Shown here piece by piece: positions 1,107-63,347 of a DNA stretch of 64,000 nucleotides. This DNA comes from Dendrobates tinctorius (lineage: Eukaryota): positions 4,340,001-4,404,000 of the forward strand of contig NW_027361806.1 in NCBI RefSeq assembly GCF_039654945.1. Direction: 5' to 3'. Numbering within the stretch: the stretch's first letter is position 1; every line of letters begins with the position of its first letter. The translations under genes were made by a program, and so were the position numbers. The notes beneath the pieces are model-generated. The model saw nothing but the letters and a program-made list of their open reading frames with translations. It did no database searches and was not told the origin of the DNA.

Positions 1107-1713
1107 TAACACTATTAACCCCAACAGACATATGTGTACACCCTACATCGGGGGTGTGGATGTATTGCGCCTGCTCCAGAGCTGAACTTATCATTCTCCG
1201 TATATAGCAATAAATGCCTCCAATGGCAGCAACAGAGGCCAGCTCCAAACTGTCGTGCCAGCCTGAGGCTTCCAAGAGTCACTGTTCATCTTTGTGGCTT
1301 GTTACTACAATATACAGCACAAGCTATCCAAATGATCACAGGTTCTAGCATTGTATGGGAAGAGGAAAAAAAAAAAAACATTTAAATTCCCAATAAAAAA
1401 AACCCAAAACAGGTTTGTCATTGCTGGGCCTGCAAATGACCGATTTATGGAAGTTTAAAATAAAACTGTATGGTAAACAAAGAAAAAAAAAAAAATAGCA
1501 AAATGATGTTTTCAAGTTATCCTGCATTTCCTCAAAAAAGATGGAATAAAATGCAATAAAACATTGTCATGTACCCAAATATGAACTATAACTTGCCACA
1601 CAATACCTTAAAATGACTCCATTGGCAAAGAGAATGATACAAGTCTCAGATAAAAAGGCGACCAGAACAATTTTTGTGTTTTTATGAGGGTGGTAAGTTT
1701 TGGTATCGTGTTA

Positions 1714-2486
1714 AGGCCCCGTCACACATAGCGATCTCACTAGCGAGATCGCTGCCGAGTCACAGTTTTTGTGACGCAACAGCGATCTCACCAGCGAGAT
1801 CGCTGTGTGTGACACTGACCAGCGACCGCCCCCCCTGCCGGTATCGCCGATCGCTGTAAGAAAGCCCTGGACATTTTTTTGGTCGCTGGTCTACCGCTGG
1901 CCAGCACGTATTGCTGCATGCACACATGTCCCTTAGAAACCTGATGTGTACCTTAGTTACCAGCTCCCTGCATCAGCGCGCTGGTAACTACACAGCGATT
2001 GCGTGCGATGGGCGTCGCTGGTGAAGCTGCCTGTTTAGCAGCTCACCAGCGATCATGACACGTTGATATCGTTGTCGGGATCGCTGGTGAGTCGCTATGT
2101 GTGACGGGGCCCTAAAGGCTCTTTTACATTTAGCGATGCACCAGCGATCCGACCCGGTCAGGATCGCTGGTGCATCGCTAAATGATCGCTAGTGAGCTTT
2201 CACACAGAAAGATCTCACAGCGATGCAGCAGCGACGCAGCGCACGATACTCACCTTTCACACACAGCGATCCTGCGTCCTCCCGCCCGCGTCCAGCGTCG
2301 CTCGTCTCACACAGCAGGAAGCAGACGACGAGAAATGGAGCTGTGCGATCAGCGATGGACAGCGGGGGAGCCGGTCGGAGGCAAGTATCACACATAGCGA
2401 TATCGCTAGCAATATCGCTATAACGTCACAAAATCAGTGACGTTTTAGCGATATCGCTAGTAATATCGCTATGTGTAAAACCCCCT
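1714..2486. mobile_element. Two abutting Harbinger-type MITEs (~1714-2112 and ~2116-2486)
   Basis: ggccccgtcacacatagcga...tcgctatgtgtgacggggcc TIRs; elements share a TAA junction. Confidence 0.7.
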
Positions 2487-3029
2487 TTAGTCAGCTGAAA
2501 AAAAAGTTTGATTACTCAGCAAGAGAAATAAAATAATCTTGCAATTATGAGACCTTTAATGAATGACAAGATTAAAATAAGTGATGGTACACAGAAGCCT
2601 TCCAGACTCCCGAGGTCTCTATCATGGGTCAGTCAGGTGTAACATAGTATGTGAAGAAACACAAATATAGGCACAGAGCAGAGATAGCAGAATAAATGAA
2701 CATTTGAGACAAAGACAAAACAAAAAAACAAAACAAAAGAATAAAACAAACTGAGCTCAGAGTGAATCTTTACTTAGCTTAGAAGGTGTGAAAGTTTTAT
2801 TGTTCCAATATCCATGTAATATCAAGAGACCTGATGTCCTCAGAGGAGTGAGACAGTCCCTAGAGACACAGAGGGTATCAGGTCTCTGATCTTATATGAT
2901 TACTGGGACAATAAAACTCACTTATCTATAAGCTAATTAAGGATAAGTGTGTTTCTTCAGATACTTTGTTATACTATGCCTGATAGAGATCCAAGTAGTC
3001 TGGAAAGCTGCTGTGTAAAGGGCCTGTCA

Positions 3030-3196
3030 TTTCAAGTATACCCGGCATAAGGAGTATTGGGGGAGGGGGGAGGGGGGATGGCTTTGATTGTATTACTACA
3101 AGATATGTGAATTGTTACATGTATATTGATATCCACTGTTTATTGTTTAAAATCTTTTGAAACCTAAATAAAAATAACTGGTTTAAAAAAAAAAAA
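3030..3196 (+). mobile_element. 5'-truncated L1-like 3' end with poly(A) tail
   Basis: G-rich tract, AATAAA, poly(A); 13-bp TSD aaagggcctgtca at 3017-3029 and 3197-3209. Confidence 0.7.
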
Positions 3197-6675: not shown

Positions 6676-7120
6676 AGCGTTACATCCTGTATGACACTCC
6701 AGAGCAGCACTCACTATTCTGCTGGTACAGTCACTGTGTACATACATTATATTACTGATCCTGAGTTACATCCTGCATTATATTCCAGAGCTGCACTCAC
6801 TATTCTGCTGGTGCAGTCACTGTGTACATACATTACTGATCCTAAGTTACATTCTGTATTATCCTCCAGAGCTGCACTCACTATTCTGCTGGTGCAGTCA
6901 CTGTGTACATACATTACTGATCCTGAGTTACATCCTGTATTATATTCCAGAGCTGCACTCACTATTCTGTTGGTGCAGTTACTGTGTACATACATTACTG
7001 ATCCTGAATTACACTCCAGAGCTGCACTCACTATTCAGCTGGTGCAGTCACTGTGTACATACATTACTGATCCAGCGTTACATCCTGCATTTTACCCCAG
7101 AGCTGCACTCATTATTCTGC
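6676..7120 (+). repeat. 81-bp minisatellite (~5.5 copies); same family recurs on the - strand at 43178-44140 and degenerately at 63680-63900
   Basis: Unit ccagagctgcactcactattctgctggtgcagtcactgtgtacatacattactgatcctgagttacatcctgtattatatt. Confidence 0.9.
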
Positions 7121-23975: not shown

Positions 23976-25242
23976 GGCTATGTTCACACTGGGCATTTTT
24001 TCTGCAGCAAAACCTGATCTCTTGGCAGGAAAGAAGCTGCGGCAAAAACGCAGGTTTTGTTTTTTTCCTGCAGTTTTGGCATGCTACATTTGTCTCATGT
24101 GCATAATGCTTAGAGAAAAAAAAAAATCTATTCAGGTTTTGGTACAAAAAAAAAAAAAAAAAGCTACAAAACCTGATATCCGTGTTTTTTTGGCTCAGGA
24201 TTTTCAGCCCTCATTATTTTCAATGGGTGAAAAACGCAGAAAAAAAAAAAAAAAAACACTGAAAGAAGTGACATGCTCTACTGTGCAAAAACACATGCAA
24301 AGCACAAAAACCCGATGACAAAAGAAAAAAAAAAATAAAAAGGTGTGTGCACGAGATTTCTAAAATCGTATAGGCTTTATTGATACTTTACAATGCAAAA
24401 CAATATAGCAAGAGTGTGTGAAATTGTCACCGCTCTCAGTGTCAGACACAGCCTAATTGACAGCGGTCAAATTTGACTCAAAAATTTGTAAATATGTATA
24501 TGAATGAATTAAAATATAACTTAATTAATCTTATTAAAATAAAGTGAGACCAAAGACAAAGTCCACGTGGGATGAATTAATATAAAAACATGCAGCCACA
24601 AACCATCGATTGTGGTCAAGAAGAGGGGTCCCATATCCCCCCTCCAGCATCTTTATTGTCACCCATTCCTCTGGTTGTGGGACCCTTCTCATCGATTTAC
24701 TCTCCTGATGAGTCTTGCCCAGATGAAACGCGTCGAGAGTAAATAACGCACCGGAGCCTCGGGCATAAGCACTTACCCATATGAATGGGACCTGTCGGAG
24801 GGGGACACACCCTGGTATACCATGAGAGCATTCCAATTGTTTATACTGACAAGCATATCAACTCTCTCCTGCAGTGAGAGGAGACAGCTGACTATCTGCC
24901 AATACTGGTTATTACTGTCAGTCTTTGAGGGATTGCATGTACTGACAGAAGGACAAGCAATATTAATACCCACGTGACTGCATACAGTAGTCCGATAGTT
25001 TGTGTCTGCATGTTTTTATATTAATTACAGCCCAGGTGGGCTTGTGCCTTTGGTCTCACTTTATTTTAATAAGATTAATTAAAAGTAATATTTTAATTAA
25101 TTCATATATTTATTATCAATTTTTGGTTTCAATATGACCTTTGTCAATTAGACTGTGGCTGATACTGTAAAACGCAGCTGCAAAATTTCATTAAAAAAGC
25201 AAAAAAAAAAAATGCTGAAAAACATCCAGTGTGAACATAGCC
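23976..25242. mobile_element. Harbinger-type MITE interrupted by a ~750-bp inverted-repeat, hammerhead-bearing insert (~24400-25157)
   Basis: TIR ggctatgttcacactgg / ccagtgtgaacatagcc; insert has ~160-bp imperfect inverted arms (~24447-24605 and ~24997-25157). Confidence 0.7.
24695..24744 (+). ncRNA. Minimal type I hammerhead ribozyme motif
   Basis: atttactctc-CTGATGA-gtct-tgccc-agat-GAAAC-gc-GTC-gagagtaaat: perfect 10-bp helix I, conserved core, GUC cleavage triplet. Confidence 0.8.
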
Positions 25243-32161: not shown

Positions 32162-32913
32162 AGGCTGTGTGCACACGTTGCAGAAATGCTGCGGAATTTC
32201 TGCGCTCCCGCTGCAAATTTGCATGTGTTTTTCCCGTGGAAAACAAGCGTTTTGCAAGCGTTTTTCGCTTGCGCATTACAAGCGCTTAGCATCGCTTGGA
32301 AATAAGATGTTAAAATAATTAAAAAAAAATAAAATATTGTTATTCTCACCTTCCGAAGGTCCCCGATCTGCTCTGTGGCGCTCCCGCATCTTCCGGTCCC
32401 AGTAATGCTTTGCGCGAAGGACCTGAGATGATGTCATCGCGGTCATTCGTGCAAAGCATTACTGGGACCAGAAGCGGGAGTGTGGGGAGAGGCGGGAAGG
32501 ACTCCGGGGGCCATCAGAGGGTGAGTATATCACTATTTTTTATTTTTTTTTATATTTTTTTACAGGATTATGGTACCCAGGGCCTGGAGGAGAGTCTCCT
32601 CTCCTCCAGGCATCCGCACATGGTGGGCATAGCCACATGCGAAAAGTAAGCGGATCAATGCAATTCCACAACAAGAATGGGCATGCTACGGATTTTTCCA
32701 CTATGCGATTCCGCAGCGGAAAAATCTGCAGCATTAGCACAGCATGTGTGGAATCCCATAGGATTGCATGAGATGCATTTTCTTTGTGTTTTCGCGGCGA
32801 TTCCGCAGCGGAAAAATGCAGCGAAAACGCAAAAAAACACAACATGTGCATACAGCCTAACATTACTAATTTTAGTTTTGTCAGACATTAATAGTCTCAT
32901 AAGTACAAGATTA

Positions 32914-35140
32914 TTATGTATCACACAGGATAGTATAGGATTAGATACACGGCTCGGTAATCAGTATCACACAGGAGAGGATAAGATGCACGGCTCAGCA
33001 GTCAGTATCACACAGGATAGGATTAGATACACAGCTCAGCAGACAGTATCACACAGGAGAGGATTAGATACACAGCTCAGCAGTCAGTATCACACAGGAT
33101 AGTATTAGATACACGGCTCAGCAGTCAGTATCACACAGGATAGGATTAGATACACGGCTCAGCAGACAGGATCACACAGGAGAGGATTAGATACACGGCT
33201 CAGCAGACAGTAACACAGGATAGGATTAGATACACGGCTCAGCAGTCAGTATCACACAGGATAGGGTTAGATACATGGCTCAGCAGACAGTATCACACAG
33301 GAGAGGATTAGATACACGGATCAGCAGTCAGTATCACACAGGACAGGATTAGATACATGGCTCAGCAGACAGTATCACACAGGAGAGGATTAGATACACG
33401 GCTCAGCAGACAGTATCACAAAGGATAGGATTAGATACATGGCTCAACAGACAGTATCACACAGGATAGGATTAGATACGCGGCTCAGCAGTCAGTATCA
33501 CACAGGATAGGATTAGATACACGGCTCAGCAGTCAGTATCACACAGGATAGGATTAGATACACGGCACAGCAGTCAGTATCACACAGGATTGGATTAGAT
33601 ACACGGCTCGGCACACAGTATCACACAGGAGAGGATTTGATACACGGCACAGCAGTCAGTATCATACTGGATAGGATAAGATGCATAGCTCAGCAGTCAG
33701 TATCACACAGAATAGGATTAGATACACGGCTCAGCAGACAGTATCACACAGGATAGGATTAGATACACGGCTCAGCAGACAGTATCACACAGGAGAGGAT
33801 TAGATACACGGCACAGCAGTCAGTATCATACTGGATAGGATAAGATGCATAGCTCAGCAGTCAGTATCACACAGAATAGGATTAGATACACGGCTCAGCA
33901 GTCAGTATCACACAGGATTGGATTAGATACATGGCTCAGCAGTCAGTATCACACAGGATTGGATTAGATACATGGCTCAGCAGTCAGTATCACACAGGAT
34001 AGGATTAGATACACGGCTCAGCACACAGTATCACACAGAAGAGGATTAGATACACGGCTCAGCAGACAGTATCACACAGGATAGGATTAGATACACGGCT
34101 CAGCAGACAGTATCACACAGGAGAGGATTAGCTACACGGCTCAGCAGTCAGTATCACACAGAATAGGATTAACTACACGGCTCAGCAGTATCACACAGGA
34201 GAGGATTAGCTACACGGCTCAGCAGTCAGTATCACACAGGATAGGATTAGATACACGGCTCAGCAGTCAGTATCACACAGTAGAGGATTAGATACACTGC
34301 TCAGCAGTCAGTATCACACAGAATAGGATTAACTACACGGCTCAGCAGTCAGTATCACACAGGATAGGATTAGATACACGGCTCAGCAGTCAGTATCACA
34401 CAGGAGAGGATTAGATACACGCCTCAGCAGTCAGTATCACACAGAATAGGATTAACTACACGGCTCAGCAGTCAGTATCACACAGGATAGGATTCGATAC
34501 ACGGCACAGCAGTCAGTATCACACAGGATAGGATAAGATGCATAGCTCAGCAGTCAGTATCACACAGGATAGGATTAGATACACGGCTCAGCACACAGTA
34601 TCACACAGAAGAGGATTAGATACACGGCTCAGCAGACAGTATCACACAGGATAGGATTAGATACACGGCTCAGCAGACAGTATCACACAGGAGAGGATTA
34701 GCTACACGGCTCAGCAGTCAGTATCACACAGAATAGGATTAGATACACGGCTCAGCAGTCAGTATCACACAGGAGAGGATTAGATACACTGCTCAGCAGT
34801 CAGTATCACACAGAATAGGATTAACTACACGGCTCAGCAGTCAGTATCACACAGGATAGGATTAGATACACGGCTCAGCAGTCAGTATCACACAGGAGAG
34901 GATTAGATACACGGCTCAGCAGTCAGTATCACACAGAATAGGATTAACTACACGGCTCAGCAGTCAGTATCACACAGGATAGGATTCGATACACGGCTCA
35001 GTAGTCAGTATCACACAGGAGAGGATTAGATACACTGCTCAGCAGACAGTATCACACGTGGCAGGCTTAGATACATGGCTCAACAGACAGTATCACACAG
35101 GACAGGATTAGATACACAGCTCAGCAGACAGTATCACACG
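32914..35140 (+). repeat. 41-bp minisatellite, ~54 copies
   Basis: Unit ggattagatacacggctcagcagtcagtatcacacaggata with recurring variants. Confidence 0.97.
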
Positions 35141-40421: not shown

Positions 40422-41126
40422 TTTTGTAAAATGGCTGGACCAGGTTGCAGACAAGCATCGCACGCGGCCAGTGCTTGGAGGTCGTTTAGGATCCGAGCCT
40501 CGCCTATTGCCGCCCTCCCTACTCTGCAGCACTCGGCTCCTCTCCACTGCTGTGGATTACACACCTCCAGCTCGCTTCACAAGAGAAGACTAAACGCCCA
40601 AGAAGAAGAGTTTGACCAGATGATGCAGAATTATAAAGACGAGCTGAGAAAGACGCCAAGGTCAGCTGTGTTCCTGAGTATCGCTGGACTGATCCCGGTG
40701 GTAGTTGCTCCTCTTACCATGAATTTTGGGGGTTATTATTACCCAGAAATGGCATTTACTCAACTTGCCTCTGCCAGCTGCTTGTTATCATTTTATGGTG
40801 GAATTCGTTGGGGTATTTCGGTTCCTGAAAACAGCCCATTCCGGCCGGACTTGCTGAACTTTGGGATCGGCACATTTCTTCAGTTTGTTGCATGGACAGC
40901 TTTGGTAGTGTCACATGATATTCTCGTTGCGGCGGTGACAGTGATTGGTGGATTGATCGTGGGGGCATTAGGGGGGTTCAGGATGCTTCCTCCTTTTCCA
41001 TTTTGGCTTAGTTTTCTGAGAAATGTTTGTTTCCTGTTGACCTTCTGTTGTATCCTGGCCACTATGTGGTTCTTCGCCATCTACCCAGAAAAATCTCTGA
41101 AAAATGAATTCCAAAATAAAAACTGA
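40422..41126 (+). CDS. TMEM69: TMEM69 main coding exon (DUF3429-type membrane protein; 248 aa total)
   Basis: Poly-T acceptor ttacag at 40421; motifs AGLIP and LLSFYGGIRWG, multiple hydrophobic segments; AATAAA at 41183; position between GPBP1L1 and IPP as in other vertebrates. Confidence 0.92.
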   Translation, partial: FCKMAGPGCRQASHAASAWRSFRIRASPIAALPTLQHSAPLHCCGLHTSSSLHKRRLNAQEEEFDQMMQNYKDELRKTPRSAVFLSIAGLIPVVVAPLTMNFGGYYYPEMAFTQLASASCLLSFYGGIRWGISVPENSPFRPDLLNFGIGTFLQFVAWTALVVSHDILVAAVTVIGGLIVGALGGFRMLPPFPFWLSFLRNVCFLLTFCCILATMWFFAIYPEKSLKNEFQNKN

Positions 41127-42184: not shown

Positions 42185-42380
42185 ACCCTCAGCACCTGGT
42201 CTACCCGGCTGCACTATCACACCCTCAGCAGTTGGTGTACCCGGCTGCACCACCACACCCTCAGTACTCAGTGTACCTAGCTGCACCATCACACCCTCAG
42301 CACCCAGTGTACCTAGTTGCACCCTCCGTAGCCGGCTGCACCACCACACCCTCGGCACCCAATGTACCCGGCTGCGCCGT
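42185..42380. repeat. 36-bp imperfect tandem repeat in the IPP 3'UTR
   Basis: cacaccctcag recurs at 42218, 42254 and 42290. Confidence 0.8.
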
Positions 42381-42403
42381 CAGCCAACACTGCAATATTT
42401 GGG

Positions 42404-42628
42404 TCAGAGGACGGCCAGGCTCCCCTCACAGCGGCTAGTTATCATGCTGCCAATCTCCGTCCAGGCGTCTGTATGTGGGTTATAAACCTCTACAGAGTCA
42501 GAAGTCACAGGGGCTGAATGATTCTGCATGCTGGCTCTTCCCCCGGTGGCGTACAGAAGCCCATTCACGCTGACCACAGAGACGCCTGCTCTGGGGACCC
42601 TCATTGGTGCCACATCCACCCACTTATC
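42404..42628 (-). CDS. IPP: IPP (KLHL27) last coding exon, Kelch repeat
   Basis: DKWVDVAPMRVPRAGVSVVSVNGLLYATGG...EGSLAVL*; the eight coding exons sum to 1755 nt = 584 aa + stop. Confidence 0.96.
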   Translation of the reverse strand, partial: DKWVDVAPMRVPRAGVSVVSVNGLLYATGGRASMQNHSAPVTSDSVEVYNPHTDAWTEIGSMITSRCEGSLAVL

Positions 42629-42921
42629 CTGCAAAGAAAAGAAGGCATGAAAACGTTAATTAAGACTTGATCTGCCAGAAGCTTTTTTCTATGTCCTGAC
42701 TGTTTGTTACATTTTACCTGCAGTGATACACTGTATCAGTCCACAGCAGATGGATTAGACAGACTACAATTGTAACAAACCCTCAGCTATGAAGTTTTCA
42801 GCCTGTCAGTAAACTTTCACGTTCATTGATAGCAAGCAGAGATCTTGAGAATAGTAACATTTCTATTAATTGCAAAGTTTTGTCAAAAGACAAGACCCCA
42901 CCGCCGTCCTCTCCTGATTAC

Positions 42922-43142
42922 CTCCACAAAAGAAAACTTCTCCACAGTGTTTAAAAAATCCTGACTTTCGTTCCATCCGCCCACCGCATACAAGCAGTCG
43001 TTTAAAAAGGCTACACCCAAGTATGCCCTGCGGGTCCCCATACAGGGGAGCAATATCCAGCGCTTGGTAATGGGATCATATACTTCAGCTGAGGAAAGTT
43101 CTATCCCCTCCTGGCCAATTCCACCGACCACATAGATCAACC
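42922..43142 (-). CDS. IPP: IPP coding exon 7 (221 nt), Kelch repeats
   Basis: GLIYVVGG...YLGVAFLNDCLYAVGGWNE...FSFVE; tag acceptor, gtaatc donor. Confidence 0.95.
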
Positions 43143-43411
43143 CTAAAAAAAGAATAAGATTCCAGAATCACAAAAGAATAGTGAGTGCAGCTCTGGAGTA
43201 TAATACAGGATGTAACTCAGGAGGAGTACAGGATCAGTAATGTATGTACACAGTGTCTGCACCAGCAGAATAGTGAGTGCAGCTCTGGAGTAAAATACAG
43301 GATGTAACTCAGGATCAATAATGTATGTACACAGTGAGTGCACCAGCAGAATAGTGAGTGCAGCTCTGGAGTAAAATACAGGATGTAACTCAGGATCAGT
43401 AATGTATGTAA

Positions 43412-43566
43412 ACATGAAGAGAGGAGGAAGATCCGGCACTGGAGACTTGATAAAATCCACGATAAGTTTTATTCACATAATTTCATGATAAAACCATAAA
43501 GGGGAAAACAGACCCCCACGCCTGACGCGTTTCGAACCTTAACCAGGTTCTTCCTCAGAGACATGA
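43412..43566 (-). mobile_element. Penelope-like pLTR fragment (hammerhead followed by AATAAA) inserted in the 81-bp minisatellite
   Basis: Hammerhead core followed ~45 nt downstream by AATAAA on the - strand; acatga at both junctions. Confidence 0.6.
43518..43564 (-). ncRNA. Minimal type I hammerhead ribozyme motif (Penelope-like), on the IPP sense strand
   Basis: augucu-CUGAGGA-A-gaacc-ugguuaa-gguuc-GAAAC-gc-GUC-aggcgu. Confidence 0.75.
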
Positions 43567-43690
43567 CATGAATAGTGAGTGCAGCTCTGGAGTAAAATAC
43601 AGGATGTAACTCAGGATCAGTAATGTATGTACACAGTGAGTGCACCAGTAGAATAGTGAGTGCAGCTCTGGAGTATAAATCAGGATGTAA

Positions 43691-44103
43691 GGCTGGTTTC
43701 ACATTTGCGTTAAAGGCCGCAGCGTCGGCCTGCGCACAGCCGCCGCTAGCTCCGCCTCTGGGCGCATGACGCTGCATGCGTCATGCGTCCCCTATCCTTA
43801 TCACTGAGGACACAGGCCGTGCGCAGTATGCGTTTGGCGGCGCCCGCGTCCTCTTGATGGTGCGCCGAGCGCAACCAAATTGCAACAGGTTGCGTTTGGC
43901 GCTGGTCGGCGCACCGTCAAAAGGACGCAGGCGCCGCCAAAACGCATACTGCGCACGGCCTGCGTCCTCAGTGATAAAGATAGGGGACGCATGACGCATG
44001 CAGCGTCATGCGCCCGGAGGCTGTGCTACCGGCGGAGGCGCGGCTTAGCGGCGGCCGTGCGCAGGCCGACGCTGCGGTCTTTAACGCAAATGTGAAACCG
44101 GCC
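43691..44103. mobile_element. Near-perfectly palindromic Harbinger-type MITE (413 bp)
   Basis: TIR ggctggtttcacatttgcgttaaag / ctttaacgcaaatgtgaaaccggcc; TAA TSD interrupting a minisatellite unit. Confidence 0.88.
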
Positions 44104-44217
44104 TAACTCGGGATCAGTAATGTAATGTATGTACACAGTAGAACATCTATGAGGCTGGGGTCACATGGAGCTTTTGTCTTATACCCATGATCCAGACACT
44201 TGATGCATTCTGTGTGT

Positions 44218-44491
44218 ATATGCAAATTGCCTCTTCAGAAAGAAAGAGGACTTTTACTCTACAGCGCCACCTATTGGTAGTAGTGATCCTACAAGTCACA
44301 ATCAACCCTTTAACGAGTCTTGTAATATGACTTAGGATACAAGCCAAATCAGAATCTCAATTTGGCTTGTATCCTAAGTCATATTACAAGACTCGTTAAA
44401 GGGTTGATTGTGACTTGTAGGATCGCTACTACCAATAGGTGGCGCTGTAGAGTAAAAGTCCTCTTTCTTTCTGAAGAGGCAATTTGCATAT
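44218..44491. repeat. 274-bp near-perfect palindrome (131-bp arms, 12-nt spacer)
   Basis: Arms 44218-44348 and 44361-44491 with a single mismatch. Confidence 0.95.
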
Positions 44492-44733
44492 TATTTTCCC
44501 AGAGGAGCATTGCACGGCGAATAAGCCTCCTTACCTTGACAAGCCACAGCTGGCATGTCACTCTCCGCAAGGAGAAACCTTACTTCTGTGTGTATAGTCA
44601 TCCCAATAAGTGGCCACATGAGGGTGCTATTACACTATGCCATCTGATGTATCAGAGAAGTTATATGGGCTCTAGGAATGACAAATTTCTTTGAGGACCA
44701 AATATTTAAAAAGAAAAAAAGTGCACCGCTCAC

Positions 44734-44856
44734 CTTGGCTCTCGCAGCAAGCAAAATTATATCTAGGTACAGACATCTGTCCCACGACCTGCCAGGCGTT
44801 GTCCTCTGGTGAAAATCGCTCAATATCATTTCCAATCTCTGCTCCAACCCAGCCAC
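44734..44856 (-). CDS. IPP: IPP coding exon 6 (123 nt)
   Basis: GGWVGAEIGNDIERFSPEDNAWQVVGQMSVPRYNFACCESQ; GT-AG bounded. Confidence 0.94.
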
Positions 44857-44944
44857 CTGTGGTGACAAATGAGGATAATTCTGCACTCTACTCTCGGTCT
44901 GTGATACAGATACAAGTCTCAGTCATTATAGGCGCGGCGCTCAC

Positions 44945-55605: not shown

Positions 55606-56045
55606 GTAAGTCATGTACGGACACTCTGCCAGGTGCACTGCTCGGGGGCCGCCATTCCCTACTATCTGCTTATAGAGAGGGGATAACACATGCTGATAGT
55701 AGTCACCGCCGCACGCAGCCATCGTGGCCCCGGCTCTCTCCCCCTCTGAAATCCTCTGTGCTGCAGTGAGGCCCTGCTCCTTACACTATGCATTTCTCAG
55801 CCTGTTCCCTCCTGTAAGGTCAGGACCGCACTAATGACTCCTGAAATCCTCTGTGCTGCTCTGAGACCCTGCTGCTCCGAGACCCTGCTGCTCCCACTGT
55901 GTCATTCTCTCAGTTCCTACCTTTGTGATCAGCGCATTTATTTCCTGAAATCCTCTGTGCCACTGTGAGGCCCTGCTCCATCCGCTATGTGAATCTTCGT
56001 CTCACATCTGATCGGATCTGTGTTGTAGACTCTGGCGGCGGAGAG

Positions 56046-56204
56046 ATGACGAGTGCCGCGTTCAGCAGCGATGGGGCAGATGTCATCCAGCGGAAGCTGA
56101 TCCCTCCAGACCCTGATGAACCAGTGATCACCGACGAATTGCTCAAGGAAGCGTATGACATTCATAAAACCATTGATTTCATCAAGGAAAAAGCAGCAAA
56201 AAAG
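56046..56204 (+). CDS. DPH2: DPH2 (diphthamide biosynthesis 2) first conserved coding exon (exon starts 56029)
   Basis: MTSAAFSSDG...AYDIHKTIDFIKEKAAKK, donor gtggga; continues as VALQFPD in the next exon. Confidence 0.9.
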
Positions 56205-58330
56205 GTGGGAGTGTCCTCCCCCCACCCCCCACCCCCCCACTTTCCCCGCGTGTCCTCCCTCCCCTTTCTCCATCTCTGTATCACATCAGAGGATCCTGTA
56301 GCAAACCCGTCTCCGGCACCGGCCTCTCTCCTCCTCCTCGTCTCCGGCACCGGCATCTCTCCTCCTCCTCGTCTCCGGTCTCTCTCCTCCTCGTCTCCGG
56401 TCTCTCTCCTCCTCGTCTCCGGCCTCTCTCCTCCTCCTCGTCTCCGGCACCGGCCTCTCTCCTCCTCCTCGTCTCCGGCACCGGCCTCCCTCCTCCTCCT
56501 CCTTCTCTCCGGCACCGGCCTCCCTCCTCCTCCTCCTTCTCTCCGGCACCGGCCTCCCTCCTCCTCCTCCTTCTCTCCGGCACCGGCCTCCCTCCTCCTC
56601 CTCCTTCTCTCCGGCACCGGCCTCCCTCCTCCTCTCCGGCACCGGCCTCTCTCCTCCTCCTCTCCGGCACCGGCCTCTCTCCTCCTCCTCCTCTCCGGCA
56701 CCGGCCTCTCTCCTCCTCTCCGGCACCGGCCTCTCTCCGGCACCGGCCTCTCTCCTCCTCCTCCTCTCCGGCATCTCTCCTCCTCCCTCTCCTCCTCGTC
56801 TCCGGCCTCTCTCCTCCTCGTCTCCGGCCTCTCTCCTCCTCCTCCTCGTCGTCGTCTCCGGTCTCTCTCCTCCTCCTCCTCGTCGTCGTCTCCGGCACCG
56901 GTCTCTCTCCTCCTCCTCCTCGTCGTCGTCTCCGGCACCGGTCTCTCTCCTCCTCCTCGTCGTCTCCGGCACCGGTCTCTCTCCTCCTCCTCCTCCTCCT
57001 CGTCGTCTCCGGCACCGGTCTCTCTCCTCCTCCTCCTCCTCCTCGTCGTCTCCGGCACCGGTCTCTCTCCTCCTCCTCCTCCTCGTCGTCTCCGGCACCG
57101 GTCTCTCTCCTCCTCCTCCTCCTCGTCGTCTCCGGCACCGGTCTCTCTCCTCCTCCTCCTCCTCGTCGTCTCCGGCACCGGTCTCTCTCCTCCTCCTCCT
57201 CGTCGTCTCCGGCACCGGTCTCTCTCCTCCTCCTCCTCCTCGTCGTCTCCGGCACCGGTCTCTCTCCTCCTCCTCCTCCTCGTCGTCTCCGGCACCGGTC
57301 TCTCTCCTCCTCCTCCTCCTCCTCCTCGTCGTCGTCTCCGGCACCGGTCTCTCTCCTCCTCCTCCTCCTCCTCCTCCTCCTCCTCCTCCTCCTCCTCCTC
57401 GTCGTCTCCGGCACCGGTCTCTCTCCTCCTCCTCTTCCTCGTCGTCGTCTCCGGCACCGGTCTCTCCTCCTCCTCGTCGTCGTCTCCGGCACCGGTCTCT
57501 CTCCTCCTCCTCCTCGTCGTCGTCGTCTCCGGCACCGGTCTCTCTCCTCCTCCTCTTCCTCGTCGTCGTCTCCGGCACCGGTCTCTCTCCTCCTCCTCCT
57601 CCTCCTCCTCCTCCTCCTCCTCCTCCTCGTCGTCGTCTCCGGCACCGGTCTCTCTCCTCCTCCTCCTCCTCCTCGTCGTCTCCGGCACCGGTCTCTCTCC
57701 TCCTCCTCCTCGTCGTCTCCGGCACCGGTCTCTCTCTCCTCCTCCTCCTCGTCGTCTCCGGCACCGGTCTCTCTCCTCCTCGTCGTCTCCGGCACCGGTC
57801 TCTCTCCTCCTCGTCGTCTCCGGCACCGGTCTCTCTCCTCCTCGTCGTCTCCGGCACCGGTCTCTCTCCTCCTCGTCGTCTCCGGCACCGGTCTCTCTCC
57901 TCCTCGTCGTCTCCGGCACCGGTCTCTCTCCTCCTCCTCGTCTCCGGCACCGGTCTCTCTCCTCCTCGTCGTCTCCGGCACCGGTCTCTCTCCTCCTCGT
58001 CGTCTCCGGCACCGGTCTCTCTCCTCCTCGTCGTCTCCGGCACCGGTCTCTCTCCTCCTCGTCGTCTCCGGCACCGGTCTCTCTCCTCCTCGTCGTCTCC
58101 GGCACCGGTCTCTCTCCTCCTCGTCGTCTCCGGCACCGGTCTCTCTCCTCCTCGTCGTCTCCGGCACCGGTCTCTCTCCTCCTCGTCGTCTCCGGCACCG
58201 GTCTCTCTCCTCCTCGTCGTCTCCGGCACCGGTCTCTCTCCTCCTCGTCGTCTCCGGCACCGGTCTCTCTCCTCCTCGTCGTCTCCGGCACCGGTCTCTC
58301 TCCTCCTCGTCGTCTCCGGCACCGGTCTCT

Positions 58331-59048
58331 ATGGAAAAAGCATATATAGAATGGGAGGAATAGGGCTAAGTGACAGCACATGTGAAAAAGACTTGGGTAT
58401 ACTAATAGATCACAGACTGAATATGAGTCAACAGTGTGATGCAGCAGCAAAAAAGGCAAATGCAATTCTAGGATGTATTAACAGAAGCATACAGTCTAGA
58501 TCACGTGAAGTCATTATTTCCCTCTACTCCTCTTTGGTCAGACCTCATCTGGAATATTGTGTCCAGTTTTGGGCACCACATTTTAAAAAAGACATCAACA
58601 AACTGGAGCAAGTTCAGAAAAGAGCGACCAGAATGGTGACCGGTCTGCAAACCCTGTCTTATGAGGAAAGGTTGCAGGATTTGGGAATGTTTAGTTTGCA
58701 AAAGAGAAGACTGAGAGGAGACTTAATAGCTGTCTACAAATATCTAAAGGGCTGTCACATTGTAGAAGGATCAACTTTATTCTCATTTGCACAAGGAAAG
58801 ACTAGAAGCAATGGGATGAAACTGAATGGGAGGAGACACAGATTAGATATTAGAAAAAACTTTTTGACAGAGTGATCAATGAGTGGAACAGGCTGCCACG
58901 AGAAGTGGTGAGTTCTCCTTCAATGGAAGTCTTCAAACAGAGGCTGGACAGACATCTGACTGGGATGATTTAGCGAATCCTGCTTTGAGCAGGGGGTTGG
59001 ACCAGATGGCCCAGGAGGTCCCTTCCAACTCTACGATTCTATGATTCT
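58331..59048 (+). mobile_element. 5'-truncated CR1 LINE (ORF2 C-terminus, 3'UTR and tail)
   Basis: EKDLGILID..LNMSQQC...LYSSLVRPHLEYCVQFWAP...RRLRGDLI; frameshift near 58870; 3' end ggtcccttccaactctacgattctatgattct. Confidence 0.93.
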
Positions 59049-59574
59049 CTCCTCCTCGTCGTCTCCGGCACCGGTCTCTCTCCTCCTCGTCGTCTCCGGC
59101 ACCGGTCTCTCTCCTCCTCGTCGTCTCCGGCACCGGTCTCTCTCCTCCTCGTCGTCTCCGGCACCGGTCTCTCTCCTCCTCGTCGTCTCCGGCACCGGTC
59201 TCTCTCCTCCTCGTCGTCTCCGGCACCGGTCTCTCTCCTCCTCGTCGTCTCCGGCACCGGTCTCTCGCCTCCTCGTCGTCTCCGGCACCGGTCTCTCGCC
59301 TCCTCGTCGTCTCCGGCACCGGTCTCTCGCCTCCTCGTCGTCTCCGGCACCGGTCTCTCGCCTCCTCGTCGTCTCCGGCACCGGTCTCTCTCCTCCTCCT
59401 CGTCTCCGGCACCGGTCTCTCGCCTCCTCCTCGTCTCCGGCACCGGCCTCTCGCCTCCTCCTCCTCCTCGTCTCCGGCACCGGCTTCTCTCCTCCTCCTC
59501 CTCCTCGTCTCCGGCACCGGCTTCTCTCCTCCTCCTCCTCGTCTCCGGCACCGGCTTCTCTCCTCCTCCTCCTC

Positions 59575-59724
59575 NNNNNNNNNNNNNNNNNNNNNNNNNN
59601 NNNNNNNNNNNNNNNNNNNNNNNNNNNNNNNNNNNNNNNNNNNNNNNNNNNNNNNNNNNNNNNNNNNNNNNNNNNNNNNNNNNNNNNNNNNNNNNNNNNN
59701 NNNNNNNNNNNNNNNNNNNNNNNN
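59575..59724. other. Assembly gap (150 N)
   Basis: Run of n inside the satellite. Confidence 1.
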
Positions 59725-60354
59725 TCTCCTCCTCCTCCTCGTCTCCGGCACCGGTCTCTCTCCTCCTCCTCCTCCTCGTCTCCGGCACCGGTCTCTCTCC
59801 TCCTCCTCTCCGGCATTGATCTCTCGCCTCCTCCTCTCCTGGATCTGACTTTACACTGATACATTGTAAAAGCCCCTCAGCTGATGGCTTAGGGTGTGTG
59901 CACACGCTGCGGATTCTGCTGCGTTGTACAGTACCATAATATCTTATGTGAAATGGAAACCGCAGTGCAGATTTTTCTGCGGTTTCTAATCCACCGAAAG
60001 AATTGACATGTCATTCTTTTCTGCGGATTCCGCTGCGGTTTACCATCTCCTCCATTGTAGAGGTGATAAACCGCAGGCTAATCCGCAGATAAACCATAGG
60101 TCTTTTGACCTGCGGATTTACCTGCAGATTTTGCTCAATCCGCAGCGTGTGCACGTACCCTTAGTATCCCTTAGAGGTAAACAAGAATTTCCCATTCACT
60201 GATAGAAACCAGAAATCTTGAAACTAGTGAGAATTGAAAAATTAAAGAAAAAAAAGATTATTGGAAAGTTGCAGAACTTTTTTTTTTTTTCTGCAGGAAA
60301 AGGATTACGTTTCAGTCTGTACCAGCTTTTTAATTCCGTCCTCCTGTTTCCCAG

Positions 60355-60728: not shown

Positions 60729-61588
60729 TTATGGCCACCTTTTCTTCTCCCATACAGGTGACACCCAGCTTTCATAAAGTCCTGTATGGCAGGTTTAGAA
60801 GGTTGTAGGGTTATAATAGTACATCAGTGTCTCTGCCAGAAGTGCAGAAAGTGATCGCCACTTCAAGTCCCCTAGGGGGACGTGTCCAAAAGTAACCAAA
60901 ATAAAAGCAATGTAGATCAATAAAGTTTAATTACTGGTAAATAAAATTCTCAGATTAAATAAATAAAAATTAAGCGATAAGCAAGCGGTAAAGTAAAGCG
61001 CATCATTTCTGTCGCACAGAACAGAGAGGTCAAAAATACAAAAATGCAATGGTTCAGTTCCTTTTTTTTTTTTTTTGCATCCTCCCACCGTGGAAAAATA
61101 AATGCAGAGCAAAACTGTAGCAGCAAAACTGTAGCAACAAAACTACAATAAAGACCGTGCCGGTGCAACAATGTAAAGAGAAAAAAAAGTTACAGCACAA
61201 AAAAATGACTTAAAAAAAAAACAACTATATATTTGGTATCTCAGTATTTCTACCGACCCATAAAAGTTACCTGGTTGTTTCTACTGCATGGTTAAAACAG
61301 TGCTAATTTATTTATTTTTTTCATCACCGCCTCCGCCCAGTAAAAAAAAAAAATATTTTGCCCAAGATGGTGCTCAGTGATAAAACTTGTCATGAAAAAA
61401 TAACAGCTGTATGGTCAGAACATTAGGCTCTACATCTTTAAATAATAGAAAATTGGCCATTTCTGAAGGAGTTAAATCCCCCACGGGATCTGTCCCCCTG
61501 CCTGTGTTCCCCCTGCACCTGGGCCGTACTGCCTATCAGTAATGGCGGTCAGTCTCATATCCCTCCTATTAATGCTTTCTTCCATTAG

Positions 61589-61809
61589 CTGCTGTGTGGA
61601 CGAGGTGGCGGCGGAGCACGTCGGAGCTGAGGCTCTGGTACACTATGGTCGGGCCTGTCTGAGCCCGTGTCGGCGGCTTCCTGTCCTTTACGTGTTTGGC
61701 CATAAGCCTGTGAGCGTGGATCTCTGTACCAAGGCTTTCCAGGATCTGTTCCCTGCACGAGACGCTCCGGTCGTGGTTTTCGGAGATGTCGTGTATGATC
61801 ACATTCTAG
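61589..61809 (+). CDS. DPH2: DPH2 coding exon 3 (221 nt)
   Basis: CCVDEVAAEHVGAEALVHYGRACLSP...LPVLYVFG. Confidence 0.95.
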
Positions 61810-62551
61810 GTATGTGCATGCTGCAACCTCCACCTGCATCAGCCATAAGAATTTACAGACTAAGTAAACTTTCTTTATTTTTCCCCAGCATGGAAAGTTG
61901 TGAAACTTTGCAAATCGCTTTATTAGATATTGTCTTTATTCTTGTAAAAAAAAAAAATCCCATACAAGTGGATACCAAAATTCAGCTTTTCCCTAGTCTG
62001 TCTCCCTGCCTTCAGCTGCATTGATATTGCAACATTCTCATTTGGAGTACAGATGATGGCAGTGATGGGGCCCGCCTGTCTGTCCTCCTCTGAGTGTTGT
62101 TCTCATCAGAACAACGCCATATAACAGCTTCTCGACAGACTTGGTGAGACACAGGTACTGACCCATCACTACCAACAGCTGTACTCCAATGAGTACGATC
62201 TATCAGCGTAGCTAAAGGAAGCAAATATACTAGGGAAAAGCGTGGGATTAATAGCCACTTACACACAATTGTTTCTTACAGGGACAAAGGCAAATCCCCC
62301 TATAAAGTAATTTGCAAAGTTTTATAACTTTCCATACTGGACAGAGTTCTGAAACTTTTTTTTTTTTTGACTGTTGTATGGGCTGATGCTGTACCTCTGT
62401 CCGCCTGCAGGTGTCACTGTTGTCTATGCTTATGTACTTTCCTCATTGATGGCGCCTTCCAAGGAAAGCGACTTATAAATGTTGCTGATCATTGACCTAA
62501 CGGTAAAGGATAAGTGGCCTTGCCCATTTACTCGCCCTCTTCTGTCCGCAG

Positions 62552-63184
62552 GGGAGCTGGAAACACGTTTTGCAGCCATTTATCCACGGGTCGTCTTTTG
62601 TAAACTGTCTTGGCTGGAAGAGGCGCCCTCTAGTGGTGAGGTCTGTAAGTTTGGCAGGAAGTTCTGTCCTGACCCCGGTCAGTGGCCGGACGGCTACAGC
62701 GTCTTCTACGTGGGAGGAGAAGGTGCGACGCTCAGTAATCTCCTGCTGACCTGGCCGCGCTGCTCCTTCTTCAGTTTCAACCCAGTGACCAACGAGCCCA
62801 GGAGGGAAGGAGTCCACGTCAACCGCGCGCTCATGAAGCGCTTCTACCTGATAGAGAAGGCTCGGGACGCCCAGGTGGTGGGGATTCTGGTGGGCACCCT
62901 GGGGGTCTCTGACTATCTGTCGGCTCTGTCACACCTGAAGAGCATCATCCATCGGGCCGGTAAGAAGAGCTACATGCTGTCTATGGGGAAGCTGAACCCC
63001 GCCAAGCTGGCCAACTTCCCGGAGGTGGACATCTTCGTGCTGGTGGCCTGTCCCGAAAACTCGCTTTTGGACTCTTCGGATTTCTACCGGCCAATCATCA
63101 CCCCGGATGAAATGGAGGTGGCCTGTAACCCGGCGCGGGAATGGGGCGGCCGGTGCATCACCGACTTCCGGGAATTACTTCCAG
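62552..63184 (+). CDS. DPH2: DPH2 coding exon 4 (633 nt)
   Basis: KARDAQVVGILVGTLG...GKLNPAKLANFPEVDIFVLVACPE. Confidence 0.96.
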
Positions 63185-63347
63185 GTAAGTAGAGGGACAA
63201 TGAAGGACGTAGACAATGGAGGTAGGATGGAGTCCCACAGCTTGTGTTTCAATGGAGCAGAGCTGCAGTGCAAAGCACAAGGGAGGTAAAGAGAAGCTGA
63301 GGTTTATCTTACACTCTTGTGTTTTTTCCTGTGTGATTTTGGCATAG

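What the first reader, a model, noticed from the sequence alone, without database searches (positions are those of the whole stretch)
43412..43566. Hammerhead ribozyme plus AATAAA on the sense strand of an IPP intron
Seen: - strand 43564-43518 gives CUGAGGA-A, a perfect 5-bp helix II (GAACC/GGUUC), GAAAC-GC-GUC and a 6-bp helix I with two G-U pairs. AATAAA follows at 43473-43468, ~330 nt upstream of the next IPP exon. Known: this layout resembles Penelope-like terminal repeats. Inference: it is transcribed in every IPP pre-mRNA, so self-cleavage or cryptic polyadenylation could lower output or truncate the Kelch propeller. Minimal hammerheads are often weak as monomers, so activity is uncertain. 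It shares the ACGCGU helix III with the motif at 24695 although the flanks are unrelated.
Basis: partly seen in the sequence, partly recalled or inferred. Interest (0 to 1): 0.7.

Follow-up and report, generated by a model that had tools for sequence, protein, structure and literature searches.

The report
Solo Penelope-type hammerhead fragment in intron
The hammerhead motif is real, but it is an ordinary leftover of a Penelope-like jumping element, of a minimal type that does not cut as a single copy, sitting in a frog Kelch-gene intron that is spliced out normally.

Summary
On the minus strand at 43566-43516 there is a complete minimal type I hammerhead: CUGAGGA, an unpaired A, a 6-bp helix II, GAA, the palindrome ACGCGU in place of helix III, C17, and an 8-bp helix I with three G-U pairs. 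AATAAA lies at 43473-43468. The motif is on the sense strand of a 1591-nt Kelch-gene intron.

It is not chance. A descriptor found only this motif and the one at 24705 in the window, and none in 400 composition-matched random windows. It has every hallmark published for Penelope-like-element (PLE) minimal hammerheads. An exact-pattern scan found the same design in 99 metagenome contigs, one of them upstream of an RT plus GIY-YIG ORF.

The motif lies in a 155-nt non-coding insert (43415-43569). The insert interrupts an 81-nt tandem repeat, replaces 15 nt of it and has no poly(A) tail. I read it as a 5'-truncated PLE or retrozyme fragment.

A functional effect on the host gene is not supported. 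There is no partner copy for the dimer that these ribozymes need. The exon junction across the intron appears in three RNA data sets, with equal exon depth on both sides. AATAAA occurs 55 times on this strand of the window.

The scan has already noted many similar sense-strand intronic hammerheads elsewhere in this frog genome. This one is ordinary.

The parts
43415..43569 (-). 155-nt non-coding insert carrying the hammerhead. It is unique within the window and interrupts an 81-nt tandem repeat unit, replacing 15 nt of it. It has no target-site duplication, no poly(A) tail and stops in all three sense frames.
43516..43566 (-). Minimal type I hammerhead motif. Helix I is 43566-43559 / 43523-43516; core CUGAGGA 43558-43552; bulged A 43551; helix II 43550-43545 / 43539-43534; GAA 43533-43531; palindrome ACGCGU 43530-43525; C17 43524. 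The predicted cut is at 43524|43523.
43468..43473 (-). AATAAA hexamer inside the insert, 51 nt after the predicted cut and 53 nt before the insert's 3' end. It is one of 55 on this strand of the window.
43143..44733 (-). Host intron (GT..AG, 1591 nt) of the Kelch-repeat gene. It is removed in RNA contigs of runs X5, X6 and X18.
43170..43414 (-). 81-nt tandem repeat downstream of the insert. It is an extremely abundant frog repeat, and another array of it lies at 6700-7120.
43570..43690 (-). 81-nt repeat units upstream of the insert. One unit is itself split further upstream by a 413-bp inverted-repeat element.
24696..24747 (+). Second, unrelated hammerhead in the window. It is more canonical: no bulge, 4-bp helix II and a 9-10-bp helix I. 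It scores 24.7 bits on Rfam Hammerhead_1, below the threshold of 34. It lies on the opposite strand and past the gene's stop codon at 42404-42406, so it is not a dimer partner in the same transcript.

Best explanation
The insert at 43415-43569 is a solo, heavily 5'-truncated, non-coding fragment of a Penelope-like retroelement or of one of its non-autonomous retrozyme-type derivatives. It landed by reverse transcription in an 81-nt tandem repeat inside an intron of a Kelch-repeat (IPP-like) gene, in sense orientation. It brought the element's minimal type I hammerhead and about 109 nt of the sequence that follows the cut site. In the parent element this ribozyme type works, weakly, as a domain-swapped dimer of two copies, with helix III built from the ACGCGU palindrome, and possibly with help from the element's own protein. 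Here the copy is alone in the pre-mRNA. It therefore most likely folds into an inactive monomer and is removed with the intron, with no measurable effect on the host mRNA. Shown here: the motif, its non-random nature, the PLE-type design, the insert boundaries and normal splicing. Inferred: the PLE origin of this particular copy, its mode of insertion and its catalytic inertness.
For: Motif and statistics: (2 hits in the window, 0 in 400 random windows).

[quoted passage not shown] That paper counts about 9,000 such motifs in Xenopus tropicalis, most of them single and probably from truncated PLEs.

The same design (CUGAYGA + one unpaired nucleotide + GAACC..GGUUC + GAAACGCGUC) occurs in 99 metagenome contigs. 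In L078 it sits upstream of an ORF with RVT_1 and GIY-YIG domains. In that family 42 of 71 distinct copies end 44-53 nt after the cut (41 of 42 lose similarity by 58 nt), so the hammerhead lies near the 3' end of inserted units. In the Anolis element PAc, reverse transcription starts 85-92 nt after the cut (PMC11167929). Here the insert ends 109 nt after the cut.

Insert boundaries are sharp within an otherwise regular repeat. There is no A tail and no ORF.

RNA contigs of organism A cover the hammerhead at depths of 1,200-3,100 against an intron baseline of 12-38. Some carry one-base insertions relative to this copy, so other expressed copies exist.

Inertness: there is no second motif on this strand. 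The monomer minimum-free-energy fold pairs CUGA with UCAG (-18.2 kcal/mol, against -15.5 for the hammerhead-competent fold). The active dimer is -37.7 against 2 x -18.2 kcal/mol.

Splicing: the 43142/44734 joint is seen in X5, X6 and X18. Exon depths upstream and downstream are 1459 and 1590-1919 in X5, and 13 on both sides in X6.

About 44% of Xenopus non-LTR retrozyme copies are intronic (bioRxiv 10.64898/2026.07.22.740005).
Against: No other copy of this 155-nt sequence could be fetched, so family membership, consensus length and linkage to an RT-endonuclease ORF in this genome were not shown. The window has no PLE ORF near the insert. The metagenome family shares only the ribozyme and not the flanks, and the search pattern was derived from this motif. 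Rfam's type I hammerhead model does not score the motif even at E<=10. The target shows a 15-nt deletion rather than the duplication usually reported for PLE insertions. All reads data are contigs, which cannot show RNA ends or modest losses of pre-mRNA, so weak in vivo cleavage is not excluded.
Confidence: 0.78

Rival explanations
1. The intronic hammerhead is catalytically active in vivo, or its AATAAA is used as a poly(A) signal. Cleavage could occur as a monomer aided by host or PLE proteins, or in trans with transcripts of sister copies through the ACGCGU palindrome. Either route would lower or truncate the host gene's output.
For: The core is intact and in sense orientation. Sister copies appear to be transcribed. 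A PLE hammerhead has been reported as protein-assisted (PMC11167929). Intronic ribozymes with effects on host mRNA exist in other systems, for example CPEB3 (title seen).
Against: There is no helix III and no cis partner. The dimer is barely more stable than two inactive monomers, and the 6-bp palindrome alone gives a Kd of about 0.5-5 uM, far above plausible nuclear pre-mRNA concentrations (the concentration argument is inference). Single min-HHRs did not cleave in vitro (PMC4209133). There is no exon-depth drop across the intron, and the junction is used in three RNA sets. AATAAA is at chance frequency. No contig of the close relative organism B covers 43512 or 43541, so there is no sign of conservation.
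Confidence: 0.05
2. The motif is a chance match in ordinary intronic or repeat DNA and not a ribozyme-derived sequence.
For: There is no Rfam hit even at E<=10. The fold z-score of the 71-nt stretch is only -0.88. In a multi-gigabase genome a relaxed descriptor is expected to give some tens of chance hits (my analytic estimate).
Against: No hits appeared in 400 random windows. The motif carries PLE-specific extras that a bare hammerhead core does not require: the bulge, the G10.1-C11.1 pair, the 6-bp helix II and the palindrome. It lies in a discrete 155-nt insert with sharp boundaries. The same design occurs in a true PLE family. The genome is rich in PLE hammerheads according to earlier notes.
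Confidence: 0.04
3. The 155 nt did not arrive by element-encoded target-primed insertion. Instead a piece of PLE or retrozyme cDNA or RNA was captured as filler during repair of a break in the tandem repeat.
For: The target has a 15-nt deletion instead of a duplication, the fragment is very short, and possible TG/TGT microhomology lies at the junctions.
Against: The PAc enzyme nicks both strands, so deletions are possible with true insertions too (PMC11167929). The fragment's 3' end lies at a distance from the hammerhead of the same order as PLE 3' ends. One copy cannot discriminate between the two routes.
Confidence: 0.12

Closest known systems
Minimal type I hammerheads of Penelope-like elements (Cervera & de la Pena 2014, PMC4209133; dimer cleavage in Lunse, Weinberg & Breaker, RNA Biol, cited in PMC6765202)
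   Same: Intact CUGANGA / GAAA / UC core. Extra unpaired nucleotide between A9 and G10.1. G10.1-C11.1 pair. Long helix II (6 bp). Open helix I without a defined loop 1. Helix III reduced to the palindrome ACGCGU. Occurs as a dispersed single motif in an amphibian genome.
   Different: Helix I is longer (8 bp, with 3 G-U pairs) than the 4-5 bp quoted for schistosome families. Position 7 is G. No pLTR, RT or GIY-YIG ORF lies beside this copy. Cleavage was not tested.
PLE family recovered here from metagenome contigs (L001-L099; L078 carries RVT_1 + GIY-YIG)
   Same: Same ribozyme design at 26 specified positions. Helix II also extends to a sixth pair, and a complementary helix I lies directly at the flanks. 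The hammerhead lies close to the 3' end of inserted copies.
   Different: It comes from a different, AT-rich (35% GC) organism. The flanks show no similarity. Copies end 44-53 nt after the cut, against 109 nt here. The pattern was derived from the frog motif, so the shared core is by construction.
Poseidon PAc of Anolis carolinensis (PMC11167929)
   Same: A vertebrate PLE whose hammerhead lies just upstream of the point where reverse transcription starts, 85-92 nt after the cut. Uncleaved RNA is the main insertion template, which fits an insert that still carries the whole ribozyme. No poly(A) tail.
   Different: In PAc the ORF starts inside the ribozyme. Here all three frames are closed within the insert.
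Metazoan non-LTR retrozymes (Cervera & de la Pena 2020, PMC7229834; Li, Clavereau & Pollet 2026 preprint)
   Same: Non-coding, type I hammerhead, abundant in amphibians. Solo monomers occur and about 44% of Xenopus copies are intronic. They are thought to be PLE derivatives.
   Different: Retrozymes are tandem units of 170-400 nt with canonical hammerheads (4-bp helix II, loop-loop contacts). This is a single 155-nt piece with the minimal PLE variant. The motif at 24705 is closer to the retrozyme type.
Conserved intronic hammerheads of amniotes (HH9/HH10; de la Pena & Garcia-Robles 2010, cited in PMC7229834)
   Same: Sense-strand hammerhead in an intron of a protein-coding gene.
   Different: Those are canonical, stable monomers, conserved across amniotes and present in Rfam. 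This one is minimal, gives no Rfam hit and shows no sign of conservation in the close relative sampled.

Membership tests
PLE-type minimal type I hammerhead (min-HHR) | Conserved catalytic boxes CUGANGA ... GAAA ... U-H at the right spacing, flanked by a helix I | tested here: met
   CUGAGGA, GAA+A15.1, U16.1, C17, 8-bp helix I. 0 hits in 400 random windows.
PLE-type minimal type I hammerhead (min-HHR) | [quoted passage not shown] | tested here: met
   A at 43551. Feature as listed in PMC4209133.
PLE-type minimal type I hammerhead (min-HHR) | G10.1-C11.1 closing pair and an enlarged helix II (6-8 bp) | tested here: met
   GAACCU / AGGUUC, 6 bp, G-C first.
PLE-type minimal type I hammerhead (min-HHR) | Helix III reduced to 1-2 bp with a palindromic 15.2-16.2 and loop 3, allowing a dimer | tested here: met
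   ACGCGU at 43530-43525. The swapped-dimer structure can be drawn and evaluates to -37.7 kcal/mol.
PLE-type minimal type I hammerhead (min-HHR) | Belongs to a multi-copy consensus family in the same genome with compensatory changes | tested here: inconclusive
   RNA contigs of organism A cover the motif far above intron level, and some carry 1-nt insertions. No copies could be fetched to align. There is no second copy in the window.
PLE-type minimal type I hammerhead (min-HHR) | Self-cleavage, as a dimer | not testable with these tools
   Needs in vitro transcription of monomer and tandem constructs.
Penelope-like element insertion | RT plus GIY-YIG ORF flanked by pLTRs carrying the hammerhead | tested here: not met
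   The insert is 155 nt and closed in all frames. No RT or GIY-YIG was found among the window ORFs tested. A fragment is all that is present.
Penelope-like element insertion | 3' end a short, family-specific distance after the hammerhead, with no poly(A) tail | tested here: met
   The insert ends 109 nt after the cut with no A run. For comparison, 44-53 nt in the metagenome PLE family and 85-92 nt in PAc.
Penelope-like element insertion | Target-site duplication of variable length, often with a partial tandem or inverted 5' end | tested here: not met
   A 15-nt target deletion, and no tandem or inverted part.
Rfam RF00163 Hammerhead_1 | Score at or above the gathering threshold (34 bits) | tested here: not met
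   No hit at gathering or at E<=10. The neighbouring motif at 24699-24740 reaches 24.7 bits.
Non-LTR retrozyme | Two or more tandem units of 170-400 nt, each with a canonical type I hammerhead | tested here: not met
   Single copy. The only tandem repeat here is the unrelated 81-nt satellite.
Functional intronic ribozyme (HH9/HH10 or CPEB3 kind) | Conservation at the orthologous site and RNA ends at the cut | tested here: inconclusive
   Organism B contigs give depth 0 at 43512 and 43541, while the unique flanks are covered at 8-11x. The tool warns that holes prove nothing, and contigs cannot show RNA ends.

The most novel reading that the evidence does not exclude
Transcripts of sister copies, or PLE-encoded protein present in cells where the family is active, might pair with or chaperone this lone sense-strand min-HHR so that a fraction of the host pre-mRNA is cut inside the intron. 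Retroelement activity would then be coupled to the output of the Kelch gene, and by extension to the many other frog genes with sense intronic hammerheads.
Probability: 0.04. Interest if true: 0.7.

Novelty: new member of a known kind. Interest (0 to 1): 0.14.

Why it matters
It matters little by itself. It is one more of the thousands of dispersed Penelope-type minimal hammerheads already described in amphibian genomes, and intronic copies are common. Its use is as a clean worked example: boundaries to the base, sense orientation in an expressed gene, and normal splicing. It could go into a genome-wide test of whether sense-strand intronic min-HHRs are depleted or leave cleavage ends. Only if such ends were found would it bear on the open question of what PLE hammerheads do in vivo.

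Tried and rejected
1. Rfam at gathering over the whole window and at E<=10 over 43300-43700 gave no ribozyme hit, only a chance snoRNA match at E=1.5. I take this as a limit of the model for bulged, helix-III-less variants, not as evidence against the motif.
2. A local BLAST of the insert against the window found no second copy.
3. The search of earlier findings by sequence came back blank.
4. BLAST of the insert against the 99 metagenome loci showed no flank homology, so those loci cannot define this frog family's boundaries.
5. L074 had no long ORF. L044 and L078 did.
6. An ORF reading of the insert as the start of a PLE ORF, as in PAc, fails: the ATG at 43564 gives only 31 codons and all frames are closed.
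7. Read laying could be run only on contigs, so RNA ends, strand and modest level changes cannot be read. The bin depth of 9,268 for organism B at 43431-43517 conflicts with depth 0 at 43512 and probably reflects short low-complexity matches. I did not use it.
8. The supplement of PMC4209133 with the Xenopus families is not held.
The exons were scanned one by one by reference, so the name IPP rests on Kelch domains plus synteny recalled from memory.

Full report
**What is in the sequence.** On the minus strand the stretch 43566-43516 reads as follows:
- helix I 5' strand UCAUGUCU
- CUGAGGA
- an unpaired A (43551)
- helix II GAACCU, loop GGUUA, AGGUUC
- GAA
- ACGCGU
- C17 (43524)
- helix I 3' strand AGGCGUGG

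This is a complete type I hammerhead core. It has a 6-bp helix II, an 8-bp helix I with three G-U pairs, and a 6-nt palindrome in place of helix III.

**Is it more than chance?** I wrote a descriptor with these requirements:
- CUGANGA
- 0-1 bulged nucleotide
- helix II of at least 4 bp
- GAAA
- a palindromic insert of 0-6 nt
- U followed by H
- helix I of at least 4 bp

It hits exactly two places in the 64-kb window on both strands: this motif and the one at 24705. It gave no hit in 400 first-order Markov random windows of the same size and composition. Rfam does not see the motif at gathering or even at E<=10. It does find the neighbouring motif at 24699-24740 with Hammerhead_1 at 24.7 bits, below the threshold of 34. 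The Rfam model describes canonical type I hammerheads with a small helix III and a 4-bp helix II. The present motif departs from that in exactly the ways published for Penelope-like elements.

**What kind of hammerhead.** Cervera & de la Pena 2014 (PMC4209133) defined the minimal hammerheads of Penelope-like elements (PLEs). They listed four features that emerged without being in their descriptor:
- a G10.1-C11.1 pair
- palindromic positions 15.2-16.2 and loop 3
- consensus families with covariation

They also described a long helix II and a short, open helix I. The first three features and the long helix II are all present here. The same paper counts about 9,000 such motifs in Xenopus tropicalis, mostly as single dispersed copies that are probably truncated PLEs.

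As a direct test I scanned the metagenome collection for the design CTGANGA-N-GAACC-N(4-10)-GGTTC-GAAACGCGTC. It found 99 contigs, all from one AT-rich family of another organism. In L078 the motif lies upstream of an ORF with RVT_1 and GIY-YIG domains, which is the defining PLE protein, and L044 carries an RT ORF as well. In that family helix II also extends to a sixth pair and helix I flanks the core directly. Of 71 distinct copies, 42 stop 44-53 nt after the cut, and 29 continue into a conserved ATG about 50 nt downstream. The shared core is by construction, because the pattern came from the frog motif, and the flanks are unrelated. This therefore shows what type of ribozyme it is. It does not show that the frog copy belongs to that family.

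**The element around it.** Local BLAST shows that 43415-43569 (155 nt) is unique in the window, while both flanks belong to an 81-nt tandem repeat. Aligned with uninterrupted units, the repeat runs unchanged up to CACTATTC. The 155 nt follow, and the repeat resumes at TACATACATT with 15 nt of the unit missing. Several further points apply:
- The insert has no target duplication, no A tail and no open frame.
- It begins 11 nt before CUGAGGA and ends 109 nt after the cut.
- In the Anolis PLE PAc, reverse transcription starts internally 85-92 nt after the hammerhead cut. Uncleaved RNA is the main template and no poly(A) is involved (PMC11167929).

A 5'-truncated PLE copy, or a copy of a non-autonomous derivative, is therefore the best fit. 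A piece of such cDNA captured during break repair is a weaker alternative, which the 15-nt deletion keeps alive.

**Host gene and RNA evidence.** The exons at 42922-43142 and 42407-42628 on the minus strand are Kelch repeats (Kelch_1, 1.4e-20 and 1.5e-14). A DUF3429 (TMEM69-like) ORF lies just downstream at 40431-41126. From memory, TMEM69 is the neighbour of IPP in human. The name IPP was not otherwise tested.

Runs holding this stretch were found, and four of them were laid on 42300-44900. All four are contigs, so RNA ends and levels cannot be read. The main results were:
- Three runs (X5 and X6 of the same organism, X18 of a relative) contain the joint that removes exactly 43143-44733 (GT..AG, 1591 nt). 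They also contain the next joint, which removes 293 nt.
- Exon contigs have the same depth upstream and downstream of the intron: 1459 against 1590-1919 in X5, and one 2,582-nt contig at depth 13 in X6.
- Unique intron parts sit at 12-38 in X5. Positions inside the hammerhead are covered at 1,200-3,100, partly by contigs with one-base insertions. In X6 the only contig over 43541 carries such an insertion. Other, transcribed copies of this sequence therefore exist in the organism.
- A close relative (organism B, 2-4% divergent in the unique flanks) has no contig over 43512 or 43541. This hints that the insert or family is young, but the tool warns that holes prove nothing.

**How it works, or does not.** A 2-bp helix III with a 2-nt loop cannot form, so the monomer lacks helix III. 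The predicted monomer fold pairs CUGA with UCAG at -18.2 kcal/mol, against -15.5 for the hammerhead-competent fold. The active domain-swapped dimer evaluates to -37.7 kcal/mol against -36.4 for two monomers. The palindrome alone gives a Kd in the micromolar range. By inference, that is orders of magnitude above the concentration of one gene's pre-mRNA.

There is no second motif on this strand in the window. The motif at 24705 is on the other strand and lies past the gene's stop codon at 42404-42406. The published tests point the same way:
- A single min-HHR gave no detectable cleavage, and dimers cleaved only weakly (PMC4209133).
- The PAc ribozyme needed its protein, and no RNA-seq reads began or ended at its cut site (PMC11167929).

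AATAAA occurs 55 times on this strand of the window, about one per 1.2 kb, so one in a 1.6-kb intron is expected.

**Comparison and verdict.** This is a new instance of a known kind. Intronic copies are common: about 44% of Xenopus non-LTR retrozyme copies are intronic, although they are somewhat depleted relative to intergenic DNA (bioRxiv 10.64898/2026.07.22.740005). Earlier notes of this scan list many sense-strand intronic hammerheads and Penelope-type insertions in the same frog genome. I did not test those notes.

The proposed effect on the host gene is unsupported and unlikely. Weak in vivo cleavage cannot be excluded with contig data. End-mapping of 5'-OH / cyclic-phosphate RNA and a genome-wide search for the family would settle both open points.

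Noticed in passing
window 43691-44103 (minus strand), TTA at 44104-44106 and 43688-43690: A 413-bp GC-rich inverted-repeat element (MITE-like) is inserted into one 81-nt repeat unit with a 3-bp TTA duplication, as PIF/Harbinger-type elements make. Contigs that skip 43622-44111 exist in X5 and X15, so repeat copies without it occur.
   Followed up: partly
window about 44240-44480: A near-perfect palindrome of about 240 bp (foldback MITE-like) lies in the same intron. It is far more abundant in contigs of the related organism B (summed depths of 190,000-630,000 across 44214-44561) than in organism A's RNA runs.
   Followed up: no
window 24696-24747 (+): A second hammerhead of the more canonical type: no bulge, 4-bp helix II and a 9-10-bp perfect helix I. 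Rfam Hammerhead_1 scores it at 24.7 bits, E=5e-4. It is already noted by the scan as s1-389176. It has the same GAAACGCGUC but unrelated flanks.
   Followed up: partly
loci L001-L099 (metagenome contigs, e.g. L078:533-3892): An abundant AT-rich PLE family from an unidentified organism in several JGI metagenomes carries a hammerhead identical to the frog motif at 26 specified positions. Several copies are head-to-head (L022, L035, L053, L061, L073, L080). Of 71 distinct copies, 42 end 44-53 nt after the cut, just before the ORF's ATG.
   Followed up: partly
window 40431-41126 (+) and 61542-63192 (+): An intron-less DUF3429 (TMEM69-like) ORF lies just downstream of the Kelch gene, and two adjacent ORFs with Diphthamide_syn (DPH2-like) domains lie further on. 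Both are useful for naming the locus by synteny.
   Followed up: no
window 32800-35100; 55965-59900; 59575-59724: Long tandem arrays with periods of 41 nt and 31 nt; the second produces spurious long ORFs on both strands. There is also a 150-N assembly gap, which was left untouched.
   Followed up: no
window 6700-7120 (+) and 43170-43690 (-): Two arrays of the same 81-nt repeat lie in opposite orientation 36 kb apart (94% complementary over 186 nt). The repeat reaches summed contig depths above one million in every run laid, including the related organisms B and C.
   Followed up: no
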